Source: Euprymna scolopes
Lineage: Eukaryota
Direction: 5' to 3' (one strand)
Length of the DNA stretch: 64,000 nt
Assembly: GCA_053919585.1 (NCBI GenBank)
Contig: CM132787.1
Each line of letters opens with the position of its first letter. The stretch's first letter is position 1. Both the position numbers and the translations under genes were made by a program. This document shows, piece by piece, positions 9,194 to 21,930 of this stretch. Under the pieces are notes generated by a model that ran no database searches, had not been told where the DNA came from, and saw only the letters and a program-made list of their open reading frames with translations.

Positions 9194-9474
9194 TCGTTTA
9201 TGTAATATTAATTAATTGTTCATTAAGCATTCATGAGTTCCTTATCCCCATCATTTGCGTAGCGATTTTGTTGGTGGCGGTTTTGGTAATAGTGTAATTT
9301 GGAATTTGTTACTTTCTACTCACAGAAATTGCCTTCCTGCACCAGCAGAAAACATGTTTTTTTTAGGTTGTGGGTATAAGAGTATAATAATTATTAATAT
9401 GTACTTCAGAATAATGTAATGCAATAAATCTACTGCTATGTAAATCCAGTGACTCTCTGTCTTATAAAATATTA

Positions 9475-9775
9475 TTGACTGTAATATTTTATAAAGACGA
9501 TCCCAGCTAAATGAAAATTGACCAATACACCAGACGAGATAGAGCAAATAAATCATAATTTAGTAATTTAAATTTTATGATGTGAACTGGTTTAATTTAC
9601 ACTCTAGAATGTTTATTGTATGCAAGAAAAGGAATACATTTGAATAAGTATATGTTCTTAACCTATAGGTTTTCGATGTTTACCCATCTCCTCAATGAAA
9701 AAAATATCAGCAAATATTATAATGGTTTTTACCTAATTTGCTCAATCTAATAAACACAGGAAATCAAACATTAAA
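9475..9775 (-). mobile_element. Diverged single copy of the hammerhead-bearing repeat at 19025-19330
   Basis: Shares agatagagcaaataaat, cttaacctatagg.tttcgatgt and cct.atttgct with 19025-19330. The hammerhead core is degraded on the minus strand (TTGAGGA gatg-ggtaaa-catc GAAA acc-tata-ggt TA). Confidence 0.75.
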
Positions 9776-10656
9776 ATTTTTAAATCTTTTAAATAATAGA
9801 ATAAGAGAAATAAGATATTGGTTCACAACGAAAGGGATAATGAGCTTAATTATCAAAGTGTATGCTAAAGCCTGAAGTGAGAGGATTTGGAAGCAGGGAT
9901 GTTAACGTATCAACTGCGTATCGTTATTCTTCCGAGGCACAAGCAAACGATCCGAAGTAAGCATGAGTTCTTGGTTTCTCATTTGGTTAGATGAGATATC
10001 GGATACATATTTGAATATATCAGTTCAGTGAAGATGATTTTAATAAATATATAACGACCAAACAAATATTGCGATGACGCCATTGGTCCGTAGATATTGT
10101 TACAAAGAAAGAAAATATGTTAATACTGTATCAGGAAAGGCCACAAAGCGACGCATCGCAAAATAAACAAATACCACATGGTTTGACCGACCAGATTCGA
10201 CAGGAACTTCGAGAGTAGCCAGCGGAAATACGTCACTGCACACATCATTACTAGGATAGTGGAGTTATAGTAAAAATTTTGGTACAGACCTGTACATTAT
10301 ACAACCTAAAACATGAAATAGATTGAAAAAAATCTACCATCCCTAAGACAAATAAATCACTTCTAGCAGTCACTGGCGATAAATATTTTTTTAAGGGAAC
10401 TGAAACTCCCTGTGATGTTTATTAGCATTACCAAAAAAGTAAATGTTTGCGTGCATAAGACTTCTGAAAACTTATTCGAACGGATTAGATTGAACGATGT
10501 GAATTGTTGCACCAACCTCCGAAAAAAATCTGCTATAAGTTAGAAGAAGGGACACAACGACTGAAAGGAAAAATTTCCAGCAGTTTTCTCATCGGATCTA
10601 TAGCCAGAATCGAACTGATGTAAAACGCTCTACCCATTTTCAAAAGAAGACATACA

Positions 10657-15760: not shown

Positions 15761-17829
15761 TTCTATCCTGCTATGAAGTGAGACGTGTGTAGTTCGTCTT
15801 TTGTTAGAGACAATGGAGAGTTGAACACACTCTATGCGCTTTTCTCTTTTTCAGGCATGCCTATGTCTGAACTATGCTTAGTGTACTGGTTGACCAGTTC
15901 ATTGTAACACATAAAACATGTAATTATCCCCTTCTCATATGGGCTCATTATTTTCCAAGTGAACCAATCTATTCTTCTGTTGGATTTTATTTGTTCCAGA
16001 GTTTTCGTGTCATAAATAACTGGCTGTAAAGTTTGTTTTTATCTATATCTTACGAGCATGTGTCTTACACAGGAATATATAAGCAAAACGCATGCAAATG
16101 ATTGTCTTAAAATTCTTGGAAAAGGCTCACTACTTTATTATTTTTTAATAATATTTAAGAAAACGATATGCAAATAGCTAATTATCGTCTTCGCAAGATA
16201 ATATTAAATATAGACCAAACTGTTTTTTTACACCTGTGTTTAGAATATCATCTAAACATCTGTGAGTGTTAAGTGTAAATTTTATCCACGAATTATAACA
16301 TTAGTTTACAGTCTGCAATTTCGTGTATATAGGCGGAGTAAGAAATGTTAAAAATCTTCACATATCTACGTGACAATCAATCTTAGTAACGCGCTATTTG
16401 CCTAGTTATATTAAAACTTGGGGACGTTTACAATTATTTAAACACCTATATTAAACATGGAACCGTCAGAAAAGCTATCAAAGAAATGGGGACCGAAAAT
16501 AGGAAGGATACAGGTGTAGTGATTGATCTAGTAATGGAGCTGTTATGCATGCGTTGTGAACTTAACATTTGGAATGAACATAATATTATCAGGAAGTTCA
16601 TATTATATAATTTCTGATTGCTATCATCCCATCTTATACTACAATGAAACCTACCATACACGCCAGCCAATAAATATCAGTAAATGATCTCCTTCATTTC
16701 AGAATATTTTCTTAGAATGACTTTCGAAAATACATAAGCTATTTTCTTGTTAAATGTTAATAGAAAAGCTAGACATACGTACATATGTACAAAAGCTGAA
16801 CAGAAATGATGATACAATTAAATAGATATACTTTATAAATATATACAACAGTAATCCATATTGTTTTTATTACATTGTAAAATGAATACCTCTGACAAAA
16901 ATCACCCGCCAACTAAAGCTAATAAATAATAAATATGTTACATATAGTTTTACTCAGTCTGAAATTCTCAGCATTTTGGTCTAAAATAATATATTAAAAT
17001 CTTTTTTCTATCGTATATGCATCTAGAAATTCTTATAATTTATTTTATTACACTTCCGAGCAACACATTTTAGTAGTGACAATTTATTATCGTTGTCAAT
17101 TTTATGTGTCTTCATACAGATTAATACTTGAAGCTTGGTTTAACTTCAAATAGTTTTAATTACACCTAATCAGTAATTTACTATTGGCACGTAAAATTTG
17201 GAATGCCAGTCAGTGCGCAATGATTAAAAAATAAATTGTATTTTTAAATTATGTAATTGTTTTTAAATGTGCATCGCCTAGTCACCTGGACTAATTGTGT
17301 AAATGTGGAGTTATTCCTGGATGGAAACTATACATAAATAAAAAAGAAATACATTTTTAAGAATTTGCATTAATTTGGTAGAAATGGCGACATTACATAG
17401 GAGGATTTGTATATGCATATTTTATTTACTCATTTTAAAATATAATGCATTTAACAATAAGTATATTACAATAGGGAAAGATTATTTAAGCATGCAACTT
17501 AGTGCAACAAAAATTCTGGTTGAAATATTTTATTTGTATTATATCTCTNNNNNNNNNNNNNNNNNNNNNNNNNNNNNNNNNNNNNNNNNNNNNNNNNNNN
17601 NNNNNNNNNNNNNNNNNNNNNNNNNNNNNNNNNNNNNNNNNNNNNNNNNNNNNNNNNNNNNNNNNNNNNNNNNNNNNNNNNNNNNNNNNNNNNNNNNNNN
17701 NNNNNNNNNNNNNNNNNNNNNNNNNNNNNNNNNAAATTCTGAAAAACACAACGTATACAGATATATTCGATTTAAGAATTTATTGTTTGAGAAAATGAAT
17801 ATTCAGAAGGGGGTATTTTTATTTCCTTA

Positions 17830-18450
17830 ATCCATGGATTTCCAACAAATGGCTTATATCATAAGAGGAAATGAAATGCAGTTAGCAAAATGCTCAGCTG
17901 CAAATGGACGCTAATTTTGCTTTTCAGCACAATTATTGAAAATAGGTTTTGAGTGCTTGTGGATAATTATATGAAAAAATATACGAAAAGAGAAATTGAT
18001 ACAACCTGAGTAATCGATTATCAGAACGTTTCCAATATTGTTCGGAGTTATAAACCCAGGTTGGCAGAAAATATGCCCAGGGGAGAAAGTAATCTTCTCA
18101 AATAGCGAAAGCGCATTGATCCTTACTTATTTTTCGAAAAGTATATGGGGCAGCCTTATTCGTTGTTGCTTGGGGTGTGTGTTGGTTGATGCAGTACCAA
18201 ATGCTTTCTTGGTGTTGACTAAGTGTATTCGATATTGGGTGGATATACCATTCCATTGTAATGATCCCCGTGAGTAATAGAATATGGGCATTGAGGTAAT
18301 ATGCAATGGACCTTGACATCAATAGTATAGGTAGCAAAATAGCAAAAAAATTCTGGAGATGATATTCAGAAGTGTGCGTTGGACGGCTTGCTTCTTGTGT
18401 AAATCCCGGTAAAAAGAAAGATAGTTCGCTTTCTTGTTGATAGTGGGCGA
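17830..18450 (-). mobile_element. Possible decayed LINE APE-endonuclease region
   Basis: The minus strand gives ILLLTG..EW (cf. ILxGDFN..W) and SDNRLL (cf. SDH.LV) in the expected order. Heavily frameshifted. Confidence 0.25.
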
Positions 18451-18921
18451 GGAAAGCCTTTTAGATGAGGGAAAGAGGAGATGGGGTAAGGTACAGAGGG
18501 TAAAGAAAGAGGTGGAGAGTTAATATTAGGCGAGCATGCAGGTTCTAATGGATTTTTTTCGGCGGAGGGGATTGTATTTTAGTATTCTTTAAAATGGTTG
18601 ACCTCTTGATTTTAAGTTCAAAAGGGAAATGGATATACTTGTGATTTTCAGTAGGAGGTGCGTGATAAGGTGAGGGTGTGATAAATAAAACTGGGTCACA
18701 CAACGACAACAAGCGTGATGAACTGACTTATCTGAACTTAGCAAGTCACCTTTTAGTATACAATCAAAATTAAAAGAACCAAAACTTAAACTCACTTAAA
18801 TAAGTCACCCTCGAGACATTCCATATTTTCAGACCATGACTTGTCTCTATCTCCCCCTCATGGGCTCTCCCATCCGCACGGCAACAACAGCACACCCATC
18901 ACTTATCACGCCCGCCCCCAT

Positions 18922-18962
<41 letters not shown>

Positions 18963-19224
18963 CTTCAGAATAGTTTTTATTTAACAATCAGTTGTTATGG
19001 AAACGTGAGATTGTAGGTTTACAAACTATTACTGGCAGTAATATTTTTAAGTTATCCCATCTAAACCAGAATTGCTCGATATGCAAGATAGAGCAAATAA
19101 ATTAAATTGTAATTCAATTAATTTCAAAAAAAACTCTAATCGAAATGAAATGAAGTGGATGAGTTTCATATCAATAATTTTTATTCTTCTAAGCAAGACA
19201 AAGAATGATTCAGAAAATGAATTT

Positions 19225-19266
19225 CCTTAACCTATAGGGTTTCGATGTCTACCATCTCATCAGAGG
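19225..19266 (-). ncRNA. Type I hammerhead ribozyme with one stem III mismatch
   Basis: cct CTGATGA gatg-gtaga-catc GAAA ccc-tata-ggt TA agg. The core is intact, with a C:U mismatch in stem III and a UUA triplet. Confidence 0.8.
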
Positions 19267-19421
19267 AGAGAAAATATTAGTATGCACCCTATTTGCTAAA
19301 GTCAGTGAGACATGGAAAGTCAAAGTGAAAATAACTTTCTCTTTCACTTTGACTTTCCATGTCTCACTGACTTTAGCAAATAGGGTGCATACCTCAATAA
19401 CTATTTGCTAATATTTTCTCC

Positions 19422-19463
19422 CCTCTGATGAGATGGTAAGCATCGAAACCCTATAGGGTAAGG
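19422..19463 (+). ncRNA. Type I hammerhead ribozyme, consensus-perfect
   Basis: cct CTGATGA gatg-gtaag-catc GAAA ccc-tata-ggg TA agg. All core residues and stems I, II and III are present. GUA triplet, predicted cleavage after 19460. Confidence 0.92.
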
Positions 19464-19585
19464 AAATTAATTTTCTGAATCATTCTTTGTCTTGCTTAGA
19501 ATAATAAAAAAATATTTTATATGAAACTCAACCACTTCATTTGATTTCAATGAGAGTTTTATGAAATTCATTGAATTACAATTAA

Positions 19586-19635
<50 letters not shown>

Positions 19636-20429
19636 GTGTAGATGCGTCCGTTCCGTCTCAAAAGACAAATGATACCCCTTAGGGTCAGTAGTCTTGGGTA
19701 TGTTGCCTGAATTCTTTGGGTACCGGTTTAGCAGTGTGTCTGGCTGCTGTGATTTGACTGAATGTTCAATGACTTTTATTCATTAGTAGCTTTTATAATA
19801 AATTATATAATAGCGGTGTGTTAAAACTCAAATATAACGCATAAACATTGACTCCTAGTTATCTTCAGTCATATTCCTCGAGGCTGCAATCATAGTCTCT
19901 GCTATATGTTTTGTATCATGCACATTAATTTTGTTAAGATGTTCACCTTTTAACTAAACACATTAAATAAAATGATGGCCTATTTAATAGATACAATCAA
20001 ACCAGACGCAGACGCCAACAAAATAAATTTGGCTCTTTCCTGGAATCTCGCATTCATAAATACTGTAGACAGAGCAATCACTTAGATGATGTATTGAAAT
20101 GAAATGTAATGAAAATTGTCGATGTATATTATCTCTTTTTTGGAAAAGTGTAAAAATAAAGCTAGTGACTTGTTTATCCAGCAGTTGAAGCACATGTCCC
20201 AACATTCCTTAGAAAACCCAAAGCTTTCTCAATAGTATTTTTCCTTTGTGCCGATTACATAGCTCACAGAAAGTATGTATTCCGCAGAATTATCCGACAT
20301 AATAACAGTAAATTAAATAAAATTACACAGAAGAAAGAAATAAAAATTAAGACGAAGTATAACATTAAAAAAATCCCTAATGAACGCATAAGTCGTAGGA
20401 AAAATGAAATGCTGATATCTGGAATATAA

Positions 20430-20498
<69 letters not shown>

Positions 20499-20559
20499 AT
20501 ATAAAAAAGTTAGCAATTTCCTCACCATTCATTAAATTGTGGGTTTATGCACGGCAACC

Positions 20560-21930
20560 ACAAACGCTAAATGTTTGCCAAACATTTAGCCTCCAACTCT
20601 ACTGTGGACCCAGATAACCTACTTCTCTTAGATGTTGATTTTTGCAGAAAGAAGCCCCACTCGAGCTTCTAAAAACTATCATATTTCTTCGTGATATCTT
20701 AAGAAAGTACATAATTCTGTGGCGAGTGAACCTGATAAACTCCCGTCTCTACTATCGAATTTATATTCGGCGAGGTTTTTTTGTTTTGTTTTTTCAAACC
20801 CTCTAAAACGTCGCTTACCTAATTTTGCCTACTAGCCTGCTAGGAAACTTCTCCAATTTTACCAATATACAAGAATTTTTGAAAAATAACTTGTTTTATT
20901 ATAGCTCCATCTCGCTGTCAAAATTATTTATCTGTTTATTAATGAAGTACTAGTGCGCTGGCTTATAGATACTGAACATTTTTGTGACGGACAATATTAA
21001 TTAGGGTGTTTTCTCCAAATAATCTAACGGCATTATTATAATGCCTATACCACACACTGCATAACGAAAGCGGCAAGGGTTATAGTCCTAGATATACCTA
21101 AAGAGTTTAAAAAGATTTGACACGATAGTCTGCTCATGAAAATTAATTACATGGCATTACTAGACGAATATTACTATAATAAAATCTTTCCAAAATAAGA
21201 TAGTTCCTCGGCATCGTACGTCAGAAGAATATGATGTAAATGCAGGTGTGCCTCAACTTTTCACCTTTATACCTTAATTACTTTCAATATTTATAAAGAG
21301 CTTCGTGATTGCCTACTAATGGGGTGTATTTGTTGACGCCACTCCGCAGCCAAGACACGAGAGAAAATAATAAGCACATACTAAAGGAAATCGCTTTAAC
21401 CTAAACCACAGTCTGCAGGAGTAAAAATGCACAGTAACATTCAATACTGCCAATAGCTTCTGTTCTTTAATAATTATACAAAATATTCTCAACCACGAAT
21501 GCATATGAATAATAACGAATTACCTAAAAGCTCTTACTTTATAAAAATTCGGCTTAATATTCATAGAGAACATGAACTGATACCAATACTTCGAGACCAT
21601 AAAACAGGTGTTGTGAAGATAGTGGTATCTCCTTAGCGTTCTGGAAATGTCCTCACCTGTAAGTCTATTCTATAGATATGAAACGTCACCATTCAAATAT
21701 ACGGTGTCTTGTGCTGCCAAACCGGGGTGCATTAACCGCCAGTCTTTCCCTTTTCAACAATGGTAAAACGCGTTATTAATTTCATAGTTCCGGAACTATC
21801 AAGTAGATTCATTCCTACTATGTGATCGCTGGAGTTTGACAGCCAGTACATCTTTTACAACTTATTATACAGAATGCTCTCCCTGGAAATCAGATTACTT
21901 GTACCTCCTCTATTTAAATAAAAAAAAATA
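20560..21930 (+). mobile_element. Decayed LINE reverse transcriptase (CR1/L2-like)
   Basis: Motif remnants occur in order: CLPNI/FAKHLASNSTVD, VLDIPKEFKKI*HDSLLMK (cf. LDISKAFDKVWH..LL.K), NAGVPQ, FVDAT (cf. FADD). The downstream part resembles the 39-kb copy. Confidence 0.8.

What the first reader, a model, noticed from the sequence alone, without database searches (positions are those of the whole stretch)
19100..19587. Palindrome carrying two divergent hammerhead ribozymes, each opposed by its own antisense
Seen: a ~490-bp fold-back with a consensus-perfect type I hammerhead on + (19422-19463) and a near-perfect one on - (19225-19266), both pointing away from an 11-nt loop. Established: type I hammerheads occur in Penelope-like element pseudo-LTRs and retrozymes, and PLE pseudo-LTRs can be inverted. 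Inference: an RNA crossing the locus in either direction transcribes the antisense arm first, so a ~230-bp duplex would compete with ribozyme folding. This could act as a start-site-dependent cleavage switch, or as a source of hairpin endo-siRNA and an ADAR substrate. Transcripts starting at the centre would self-cleave.
Basis: partly seen in the sequence, partly recalled or inferred. Interest (0 to 1): 0.85.

Follow-up and report, generated by a model that had tools for sequence, protein, structure and literature searches.

The report
Head-to-head Penelope retrotransposon ends with hammerheads
The palindrome is real, but it is the usual scar of one Penelope-like retrotransposon insertion into a (TA)n microsatellite: two truncated, hammerhead-carrying 3' ends joined head to head, a layout repeated at many other places in this genome, with no sign that this copy is transcribed or works as an RNA switch.

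Summary
Observation confirmed. Arms 19101-19330 (-) and 19342-19587 (+) flank an 11-nt centre. Each carries a hammerhead (HHR) with a perfect catalytic core, and the two point apart. "Consensus-perfect" is overstated: two substitutions have cost the + copy two of the six helix I pairs of its family consensus, and Rfam scores are only 16-25 bits (cut-off 52).

The arms are the last 249 and 388 nt of a Penelope-like element (PLE). Longer copies run from an RT-like ORF with a C-terminal GIY-YIG-fold endonuclease, through about 2.1 kb of UTR, into the arm with its HHR. The exact 33-nt consensus HHR occurs 2,380 times in this 5.9-Gb mollusc genome.

Among the first 100 listed, 22 lie in 11 divergent pairs. 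All 26 head-to-head pairs examined have one arm with a 139-nt "tail" and one without, and the 12 pairs whose flanks were read are bordered by (TA)n. These are published PLE hallmarks.

RNA reads laid on the arms carry other copies' letters. The right flank has zero depth, and no read ends pile up at the cleavage site.

Verdict: an old, decaying PLE insertion scar. The PLE reading is supported; the switch, siRNA and ADAR ideas are not. The scan's first readers had already noted this kind of structure elsewhere in this genome.

The parts
18922..18962 (.). Left flank microsatellite: (AC)12.5 at 18922-18946, then (AT)8.5 at 18946-18962. The (AT)n part is the target-type repeat that borders every pair whose flanks were read.
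   Evidence: Tandem Repeats Finder. (TA)n borders all 12 pairs whose flanks were read.
18963..19100 (-). Tail of the left copy: family positions 250-388 (TTATTTGCTCTATC...CTATTCTGAAGTA). It is present on this arm only.
   Evidence: One tailed arm and one untailed arm in 26 of 26 head-to-head pairs.
19101..19330 (-). Left arm: family positions 1-249 of the PLE 3' end, with a 16-nt deletion (family positions 51-66).
19222..19269 (-). Hammerhead of the left arm. Helix I 5' strand 19269-19264, CUGAUGA 19263-19257, GAAA 19243-19240. Predicted cut after A19228 on the minus strand. C/U mismatch at 15.2-16.2, as in the family consensus.
19331..19341 (.). Junction of the two copies. 19331-19334 (ATAA) continues the left copy by about 4 nt into the element's upstream sequence. 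19335-19341 (CTTTCTC) is filler.
19342..19587 (+). Right arm: family positions 1-249, ending at ...CAATTAAAT with no tail. About 93% identical to the family reference.
19419..19466 (+). Hammerhead of the right arm. Helix I 5' strand 19419-19424, CUGAUGA 19425-19431, helix II 19432-19444, GAAA 19445-19448, helix III 19448-19459. Predicted cut between 19460 and 19461. Helix I 3' strand 19461-19466, with two pairs lost.
19588..19639 (.). Right flank microsatellite: a short (AT)n, then (TG)20 at 19599-19639, which mirrors the left (AC)n.
   Evidence: (I2).

Best explanation
The locus is the fossil of one integration event of a Penelope-like retrotransposon (PLE) into a (TA)n microsatellite.

The element has an RT-like ORF with a C-terminal GIY-YIG-fold endonuclease, a UTR of about 2.1 kb, and a terminal region that carries a type I hammerhead about 165 nt before its proximal 3' end.

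As is usual for PLEs, the event left two 5'-truncated copies of the 3' end joined head to head. One begins at the distal start of reverse transcription (family position 388, with the 139-nt tail). The other begins at the proximal start (position 249, without the tail). Both cDNAs stopped at almost the same template position, about 2.1 kb short of the ORF, and were joined with a 7-nt filler.

This is inferred to happen because the endonuclease opens both strands and both ends are extended, or because the cDNA primes on itself.

Since then the two arms have drifted apart (93% identity, one 16-nt deletion). The hammerheads are passengers of that event. Whatever they do, they do in the RNA of source elements, not at this locus.

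Shown: family membership, copy number, the pair architecture, the absence of locus-specific polyA RNA. Inferred: the integration mechanism and the role of the ribozyme.
For: - Copy number. The arm is multicopy: at least 1,397 candidates, with single arms 92-94% identical to the right arm. The exact 33-nt consensus HHR occurs 2,380 times, against 0 for the reversed control.
- Retroelement behaviour. Copies show graded 5' truncation.
- Link to a PLE. One copy (C19) runs without a break from an ORF with a YRDD motif, through its stop codon and about 2.07 kb of UTR, into the arm and its HHR. The RT-motif piece has 3,556 homologues. The 10 of 14 long ones (at least 560 aa) that carry the Cys-rich motif have it after the YxDD, and a Y[IV]G motif follows it in 7 of them. 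The window family's C-terminal ORF aligns to them at E = 4e-20. An AF2 model of that domain (pLDDT 83) matches I-TevI best, with probability 0.99 and TM 0.72. T4 EndoII follows closely, with UvrC and Hpy188I lower in the list; all are GIY-YIG folds.
- Pair architecture. Among the first 100 HHR matches there are 11 divergent pairs at most 1.3 kb apart, and none tandem or convergent within that distance. In 26 of 26 head-to-head pairs one arm ends at position 388 and the other at 249. All 12 pairs whose flanks were read are bordered by (TA)n.
- One event, not two. Arms of a pair share private substitutions. In the window these are A124, G136 and T139; G136 is seen in no other of 28 copies. The 5' ends of the two arms lie within 24 nt of each other in 7 of 11 unbiased pairs (re-pairing P = 4e-4).
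- Literature. PLEs often carry an inverted 5'-truncated copy, a tail at only one end, and (TA)n targets (PMC8557442). A tail on one of the inverted pLTRs, palindromic head-to-head junctions and self-priming were described in PMC3846280. A purified PLE protein cleaves and extends both strands, and the tail lies between two internal RT start sites (PMC11167929). Metazoan type I HHRs have a 6-bp helix I, a 4-bp helix II and a short palindromic helix III (PMC4209133).
Against: - The RT domain rests on motif reading and on homology to unannotated proteins. Pfam RVT_1 does not hit, and GIY-YIG is sub-threshold in sequence (E = 0.012 in one homologue). The fold match has a weak Foldseek E-value (0.05) despite a probability of 0.99.
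Direct pLTRs and the true 5' end were therefore not seen.
- The 139-nt tail is much longer than the published 30-40 bp.
- The mirrored (AC)n and (TG)n repeats outside the (TA)n are not explained by this model and are not seen in the other 11 pairs.
- Only polyA RNA from four runs, each sampled at about 12%, was examined. No small-RNA or total-RNA data were examined.
Confidence: 0.88

Rival explanations
1. The palindrome is a working RNA device. When it is transcribed through, the roughly 230-bp duplex masks both ribozymes and feeds Dicer or ADAR. When transcription starts at the centre, the ribozymes cleave.
For: An RNA covering the whole stretch would fold into a -303 kcal/mol hairpin, against about -11 kcal/mol for the isolated ribozyme region. 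Family transcripts of both polarities exist in polyA RNA.
Against: - Reads on the arms carry other copies' letters and run off at 19342 into the family's upstream sequence.
- The right flank has zero depth in four runs.
- No read ends pile up at 19460/61, and A>G is not in excess over other changes.
- The structure is a common by-product of integration.
- The arms and helix I of the + ribozyme are decaying.
- Copies show no extra constraint on the HHR after insertion: 1.7% divergence, against 1.9% and 3.2% in the flanks.
Confidence: 0.04
2. Two independent insertions of the same family landed in opposite orientation in one (TA)n microsatellite.
For: (TA)n tracts are preferred targets and the family has thousands of copies.
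Against: - The arms share private substitutions.
- No (TA)n lies between them; there is only a 7-nt filler.
- Independent hits would not give one tailed and one untailed arm in 26 of 26 pairs (about 1.5e-8 if the two forms assorted freely at equal frequency). Nor would they give coinciding 5' ends (P = 4e-4).
Confidence: 0.03
3. A later inverted duplication of a single copy (a replication template switch), or an assembly fold-back artefact.
For: The centre is a perfect 51-bp inverted repeat. The flanking (AC)n and (TG)n repeats also mirror each other.
Against: - An artefact or a recent duplication would give identical arms. These differ at 7% of sites, by a 16-nt deletion and by the 138-nt tail.
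- The same asymmetric layout recurs at 25 other loci on many chromosomes.
Confidence: 0.03

Closest known systems
Endonuclease-containing Penelope-like elements with inverted pseudo-LTRs and a one-sided tail (Evgen'ev & Arkhipova 2005; Arkhipova et al. 2013, PMC3846280; Craig et al. 2021, PMC8557442)
   Same: - Head-to-head inverted 5'-truncated copy.
- Tail at only one end.
- (TA)n target.
- Short filler or palindrome at the junction.
- Type I hammerhead in the terminal repeat.
[quoted passage not shown]
- An Asn-rich insert in the ORF, as in the rotifer elements.
   Different: - The tail is 139 nt, not 30-40 bp.
- The UTR between the stop codon and the hammerhead is about 2.1 kb.
- Pfam recognises neither the RT nor the endonuclease of this clade.
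- Direct pLTRs and the clade (Neptune-like?) were not established here.
Poseidon PLE of Anolis carolinensis studied in vitro (Frangieh et al. 2024, PMC11167929)
   Same: - Both DNA strands are cut and extended.
- There are two internal starts of reverse transcription, and the interval between them is the tail.
- The hammerhead lies shortly upstream of those starts.
- No RNA-seq read ends are found at the ribozyme site.
   Different: In vitro, both start sites were used on both strands. Here each genomic pair uses one of each (26 of 26), and the two arms often end at the same 5' position.
Metazoan non-LTR retrozymes and Sm-alpha-type hammerhead repeats (de la Pena and co-workers; Li et al. 2026 preprint, 10.64898/2026.07.22.740005)
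   Same: A type I hammerhead with a short palindromic helix III, and a link to PLE ends.
   Different: Retrozymes are head-to-tail tandem monomers that yield circular RNAs. This family is dispersed, 5'-truncated and paired head to head. No two HHR matches on the same strand lay within 1.3 kb of each other among the first 100 matches.
L1 twin-priming inversions (Ostertag & Kazazian 2001; from my own knowledge, not checked here)
   Same: Both ends of the cleaved target are thought to prime cDNA synthesis, which gives an inverted 5' segment.
   Different: In L1 the two segments come from different parts of the RNA. Here both arms copy the same part, which makes a true palindrome.

Membership tests
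Penelope-like element (EN+), terminal region | Reverse transcriptase ORF of PLE/telomerase type | tested here: inconclusive
   An ORF colinear with the arm carries ADK-like, FDxxxYY, YRDD, FLDV and KPN..Y..S.HP motifs by my reading. It has 3,556 homologues. Pfam RVT_1 gives no hit, and the RT fold was not modelled.
Penelope-like element (EN+), terminal region | GIY-YIG endonuclease fused to the RT (C-terminal in canonical clades) | tested here: met
   A C-terminal domain follows the YxDD motif. The AF2 model (pLDDT 83) matches I-TevI best (probability 0.99, TM 0.72). T4 EndoII follows closely, with UvrC and Hpy188I lower in the list. Pfam GIY-YIG is sub-threshold at E = 0.012 in one homologue. 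Atlas look-alikes are GIY-YIG clusters at 0.94-0.96. The window family's ORF aligns at E = 4e-20.
Penelope-like element (EN+), terminal region | Inverted 5'-truncated copy adjoining the 5' end (head to head) | tested here: met
   The window plus 25 other loci. There are 11 divergent pairs among the first 100 HHR matches.
Penelope-like element (EN+), terminal region | Optional tail extension at only one end of the insertion | tested here: met
   In 26 of 26 pairs one arm ends at position 388 and the other at 249. Both forms also occur among single copies. The tail is 139 nt, longer than published.
Penelope-like element (EN+), terminal region | Direct pseudo-LTRs from partial tandem insertion | not tested
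   No complete element could be fetched. No tandem HHR pairs occur among the first 100 matches.
Penelope-like element (EN+), terminal region | AT-rich or microsatellite target | tested here: met
   (TA)n lies on both sides of all 12 pairs whose flanks were read.
Type I hammerhead ribozyme | Conserved core CUGANGA ... GAAA ... UH, with closed helices II and III and an open helix I | tested here: met
   Both window copies and the family consensus have it. The consensus-like copy folds into the three-way junction as its minimum-energy structure.
Type I hammerhead ribozyme | Score at or above the Rfam gathering threshold (Hammerhead clan CL00010) | tested here: not met
   16.4, 22.8 and 25.1 bits against 52 for Hammerhead_HH9, the best model of the clan.
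Type I hammerhead ribozyme | Self-cleavage | not testable with these tools
   No pile-up of read ends at 19460/61 in polyA RNA-seq. That is weak evidence either way. PMC11167929 reports the same absence for a ribozyme that is active in vitro.
Naiad-type PLE (N-terminal endonuclease) | GIY-YIG domain N-terminal to the RT; no canonical hammerhead | tested here: not met
   The endonuclease-fold domain lies after the RT motifs, and a canonical HHR is present.
Non-LTR retrozyme | Head-to-tail tandem monomers, each with one hammerhead | tested here: not met
   Copies are dispersed or paired head to head.

The most novel reading that the evidence does not exclude
Head-to-head PLE ends like this one number in the hundreds in this probably cephalopod genome. 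That is my extrapolation from 11 pairs among the first 100 of 2,380 HHR matches. Those that lie inside transcription units could act as a class of long hairpin RNAs in which the duplex silences the ribozymes and feeds ADAR or small-RNA pathways, with cleavage allowed only for RNAs that start near the centre. Nothing here supports this for the window's copy. Only polyA RNA was examined, so the idea is not excluded for the class.
Probability: 0.06. Interest if true: 0.6.

Novelty: new member of a known kind. Interest (0 to 1): 0.2.

Why it matters
For the scan, this removes a high-scored candidate. Inverted hammerhead pairs beside (TA)n in this genome are PLE insertion scars, and there are many of them.

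For people who study PLEs, the family is a convenient natural data set:
- thousands of young copies;
- a strict rule of one tailed and one untailed arm (26 of 26 pairs), with an unusually long 139-nt tail;
- 5' ends of the two arms that coincide far more often than chance.

These are in vivo footprints that bear on the in vitro finding of dual-strand cleavage and two internal RT start sites, and on the older self-priming proposal.

The element's RT-endonuclease clade is also largely invisible to Pfam.

Tried and rejected
- Rfam at gathering thresholds over the whole window found nothing. Only sub-threshold HH9 hits appeared on short stretches. The many miRNA-model hits over 19277-19393 simply reflect the perfect hairpin.
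- The idea of a short SINE-like unit of about 245 nt was rejected. Copies extend upstream by graded amounts into a UTR and an ORF.
- A retrozyme reading was rejected because the copies are not tandem.
- Naiad-type PLE, the label in earlier first-reader notes, was rejected for this family because the endonuclease domain is C-terminal.
- A second, Pfam-visible PLE family (L068 type, RVT_1 + GIY-YIG) was tested as the partner. It shows no similarity to the arm, and no HHR lies within 1.4 kb of it.
- Pfam on the ORF pieces gave nothing.
- A shallow hhalign was uninformative.
- A profile search of PDB sequences was weak: I-TevI at E = 0.62.
- The search for homologous proteins gave a single unannotated hit.
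- A test for post-insertion constraint on the HHR found none.
I repeated it from 17734.

Full report

Yes. The repeat finder gives a perfectly complementary 51-nt core (19280-19330 / 19342-19392) around an 11-nt centre. Further out it gives collinear blocks of 94%, 87% and 85% complementarity, reaching 19097 and 19591.

The pattern CTGATGAG..CGAAAC occurs exactly twice in the 64-kb window, at 19425-19449 (+) and 19263-19239 (-), against 0.01 expected. The two motifs point away from the centre.

Reading the + copy by standard hammerhead numbering gives:
- CUGAUGA at 19425-19431;
- a 4-bp helix II;
- GAAA at 19445-19448;
- helix III as A-U plus CCC/GGG with a UAUA loop;

As one RNA, the whole stretch would fold into a -303 kcal/mol hairpin with z = -35.

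Rfam finds nothing at gathering thresholds. On short stretches the best model of the hammerhead clan, HH9, scores 16.4 bits (+) and 22.8 bits (-) against a cut-off of 52.

**2. The arms are copies of a very abundant repeat.**

A search of the window's own 5.9-Gb genome found at least 1,397 candidates. Most cover only the right arm, at 92-94% identity. Five further loci hold both arms.

The exact 33-nt consensus hammerhead occurs 2,380 times (1,184 + 1,196), and the reversed control occurs 0 times.

An alignment of 30 arms gives the family consensus: CUCUCCU-CUGAUGA-GAUG GUAGA CAUC-GAAA-CCC UAUA GGU-UA|AGGAGA.
- It has a 6-bp helix I, a 4-bp helix II and a short helix III with a palindromic loop. 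PMC4209133 describes this as the usual metazoan type I design.
- A consensus-like copy folds into the three-way junction as its minimum-energy structure. Neither window copy does.

Relative to the consensus, the + copy has three changes:
- it lost two helix I pairs (T>C at 19421 and G>A at 19465);
- it gained the C15.2-G16.2 pair (T>G at 19458).

So "consensus-perfect" holds for the core only.

In 41 copies not chosen by their hammerhead, the ribozyme region is no better kept than its flanks: 1.7% divergence, against 1.9% and 3.2%. Inserted copies therefore decay neutrally.

**3. What the repeat is.**

Copies extend upstream of the arm by graded amounts, the signature of 5' truncation.

One copy on C19 runs without interruption through:
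- an ORF piece with ...GLYRDDALF...FLDVSL...YHKPNLNLFYIHKQSNHP...;
- then ...KCNC..C..C..VVYACTV...TYIGASSS...;
- a stop codon;
- about 2.07 kb of non-coding sequence with internal microsatellites;
- the arm with its hammerhead.

A copy on C21 adds the N-terminal part, with an ADK-like motif, for an ORF of about 795 aa.

Support for the ORF's identity:
- The RT-motif piece has 3,556 homologues in the representative library.
- In the 10 of 14 long ones (at least 560 aa) that have the Cys-rich CxC..C..C motif, it comes after the YxDD, and a Y[IV]G motif follows it in 7 of them.
- The window family's C-terminal ORF aligns with one of them at E = 4e-20. Its only interruption is an Asn-rich insert of about 100 aa.
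- An AlphaFold model of this C-terminal domain (pLDDT 83) matches the I-TevI catalytic domain best (probability 0.99, TM 0.72). T4 EndoII follows closely, with UvrC and Hpy188I lower in the list; all are GIY-YIG folds.
- Pfam sees GIY-YIG only below threshold and does not see RVT_1.

An RT-like ORF with a C-terminal GIY-YIG domain and a hammerhead-bearing terminal region is the definition of an endonuclease-positive Penelope-like element. It is not the Naiad type, because the endonuclease is C-terminal.

**4. The palindrome is the normal product of this element's integration.**

The family has two 3' ends:
- a short one, ...CAATTTAAT, at family position 249;
- a long one with 139 more bases, at position 388.

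Both are followed by (TA)n.

In the window the left arm is the long form, running to about 18963. The right arm is the short form, ending at 19587.

Among the first 100 hammerhead matches listed genome-wide, 22 sit in 11 divergent (-,+) pairs 137-1,309 nt apart. None sit in tandem or convergent pairs within that distance. I fetched all 11. Together with the window, the five palindromes, and inverted partial copies found beside "single" copies, that makes 26 head-to-head pairs:
- In 26 of 26, one arm ends at 388 and the other at 249.
- All 12 pairs whose flanks I read are bordered by (TA)n.
- Junctions differ from pair to pair, with 0-45 nt of filler. The pairs also belong to different subfamilies, so they are separate events.
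- Within a pair the two arms share private substitutions. In the window these are A124, G136 and T139, and G136 is found in no other of 28 copies.
- In the 11 unbiased pairs, the two arms' 5' ends lie within 24 nt of each other in 7 cases. Random re-pairing gives a mean of 1.8, with P = 4e-4.

Each of these features is already in the literature on PLEs:
- PMC8557442 describes an inverted 5'-truncated copy next to the 5' end, a tail often present at only one end, and (TA)n targets.
- PMC3846280 describes a tail on one of the inverted pLTRs, palindromes at head-to-head junctions, and self-priming as the proposed cause.
- PMC11167929 shows a purified PLE protein that cleaves and extends both DNA strands and starts reverse transcription at two internal sites, with the tail as the interval between them.

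**5. How it most likely arose.**

This part is inference. The endonuclease cut a (TA)n tract. cDNA synthesis began once at the distal start and once at the proximal start, from the two sides of the break. Alternatively, the first cDNA turned back on itself. Both products ended at nearly the same template position, family positions -3 and +1, and were joined with the filler CTTTCTC.

Either arm, tailed or not, can be the longer one in other pairs. So a simple "trailing polymerase" model does not fit all cases.

The window's arms now differ at 7% of aligned sites, plus a 16-nt deletion. Most other pairs have nearly identical arms, so this is an older insertion.

**6. Is this copy doing anything?**

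Four polyA RNA-seq runs of the same species label were laid on 17734-21500 at 90% likeness:
- Nearly all reads on the arms show the family's letters, not the window's, at 19395/6, 19421, 19439/40, 19458, 19465 and 19477.
- 12 to 46 reads per run leave the locus at 19342 into CTGCTACAGGACTTCTGATAAATGTATTAT, the family's normal upstream sequence. They therefore come from other copies.
- Depth is zero over 19750-20505, and zero to 0.5 from there to 21500.
- No excess of read starts or ends is reported at 19460/61.
- A>G changes are not in excess.
- The "opposite strands" joints are what multicopy reads produce on a diverged palindrome.

So family RNA exists, in both polarities with a roughly two-fold sense bias. 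There is no evidence that this locus is transcribed, cleaved or edited. Small-RNA and total-RNA data were not examined.

**7. Comparison and novelty.**

This is a new member of a known kind.

What goes modestly beyond the literature:
- the strictness of the rule of one tailed and one untailed arm (26 of 26);
- the length of the tail (139 nt, against 30-40 bp);
- the statistical coupling of the two arms' 5' ends;
- the fact that Pfam is nearly blind to this element's protein clade.

The organism is a mollusc by a run label.

The scan's first readers had already noted inverted hammerhead pairs in (TA)n, and hammerhead-bearing PLE ends, elsewhere in this genome. One of those notes, a hammerhead about 1.85 kb after a stop codon, gave me the lead to look for the ORF upstream. 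Their "Naiad" label does not fit the family studied here.

**8. Verdict.**

Interest is low (0.2).

Noticed in passing
window 9440-9790 (-): An older copy, 69% identical, of a related PLE terminal region. Its hammerhead is decayed: CTGATGAG has become TTGAGGAG.
   Followed up: partly
window 17734-17985: Another multicopy repeat with RNA-seq depth of about 5-19. Essentially all reads carry letters different from the window's, so they come from other copies.
   Followed up: no
window 18922-18946 and 19599-19639: Outside the (TA)n tracts the palindrome is flanked by mirror microsatellites: (AC)12 on the left and (TG)20 on the right, with similar C-rich and G-rich imperfections. The 11 other pairs examined show only (TA)n. 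Unexplained.
   Followed up: partly
window 19280-19392: The central 51 bp of each arm are 100% complementary, while the rest of the arms are about 90% identical. This may be chance plus lower family-wide variability there, or local homogenisation at the palindrome tip.
   Followed up: partly
L072:758-1579 (G000 C42), and homologues P0044 and P0102: The ORF of this PLE family has an Asn-rich insert of about 100 aa between the GIY and YIG halves of its C-terminal endonuclease. Pfam finds neither RVT_1 nor GIY-YIG in 9 of 10 long homologues, although 3,556 representative proteins match the RT-motif piece.
   Followed up: partly
L068 (G000 C19:88032443-88035694) and the list: A second, Pfam-visible PLE family (RVT_1 + C-terminal GIY-YIG, open frames up to about 870 aa) has more than 15,000 GIY-YIG candidates genome-wide. 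Many lie in close divergent pairs. No similarity to the window's arms.
   Followed up: partly
G000 C12:53040573-53041109: A tandem array of units of about 103 bp, derived from arm positions 14-114, sits next to a normal copy. The unit does not hold a complete hammerhead.
   Followed up: no
window 19510 onward (loose ends): Many RNA reads leave the right arm at 19510 into TCTTTTGATTTGAAATTCAAACATTTCATG. The most expressed relatives therefore belong to a subfamily that differs from the window's copy downstream of the hammerhead.
   Followed up: no
L069 2397-2469 / 2462 onward (G000 C21): A near-full-length copy of the element starts with its ORF N-terminus directly abutting a short inverted, untailed arm fragment (positions 178-249). 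This shows the same head-to-head rule for long copies.
   Followed up: partly
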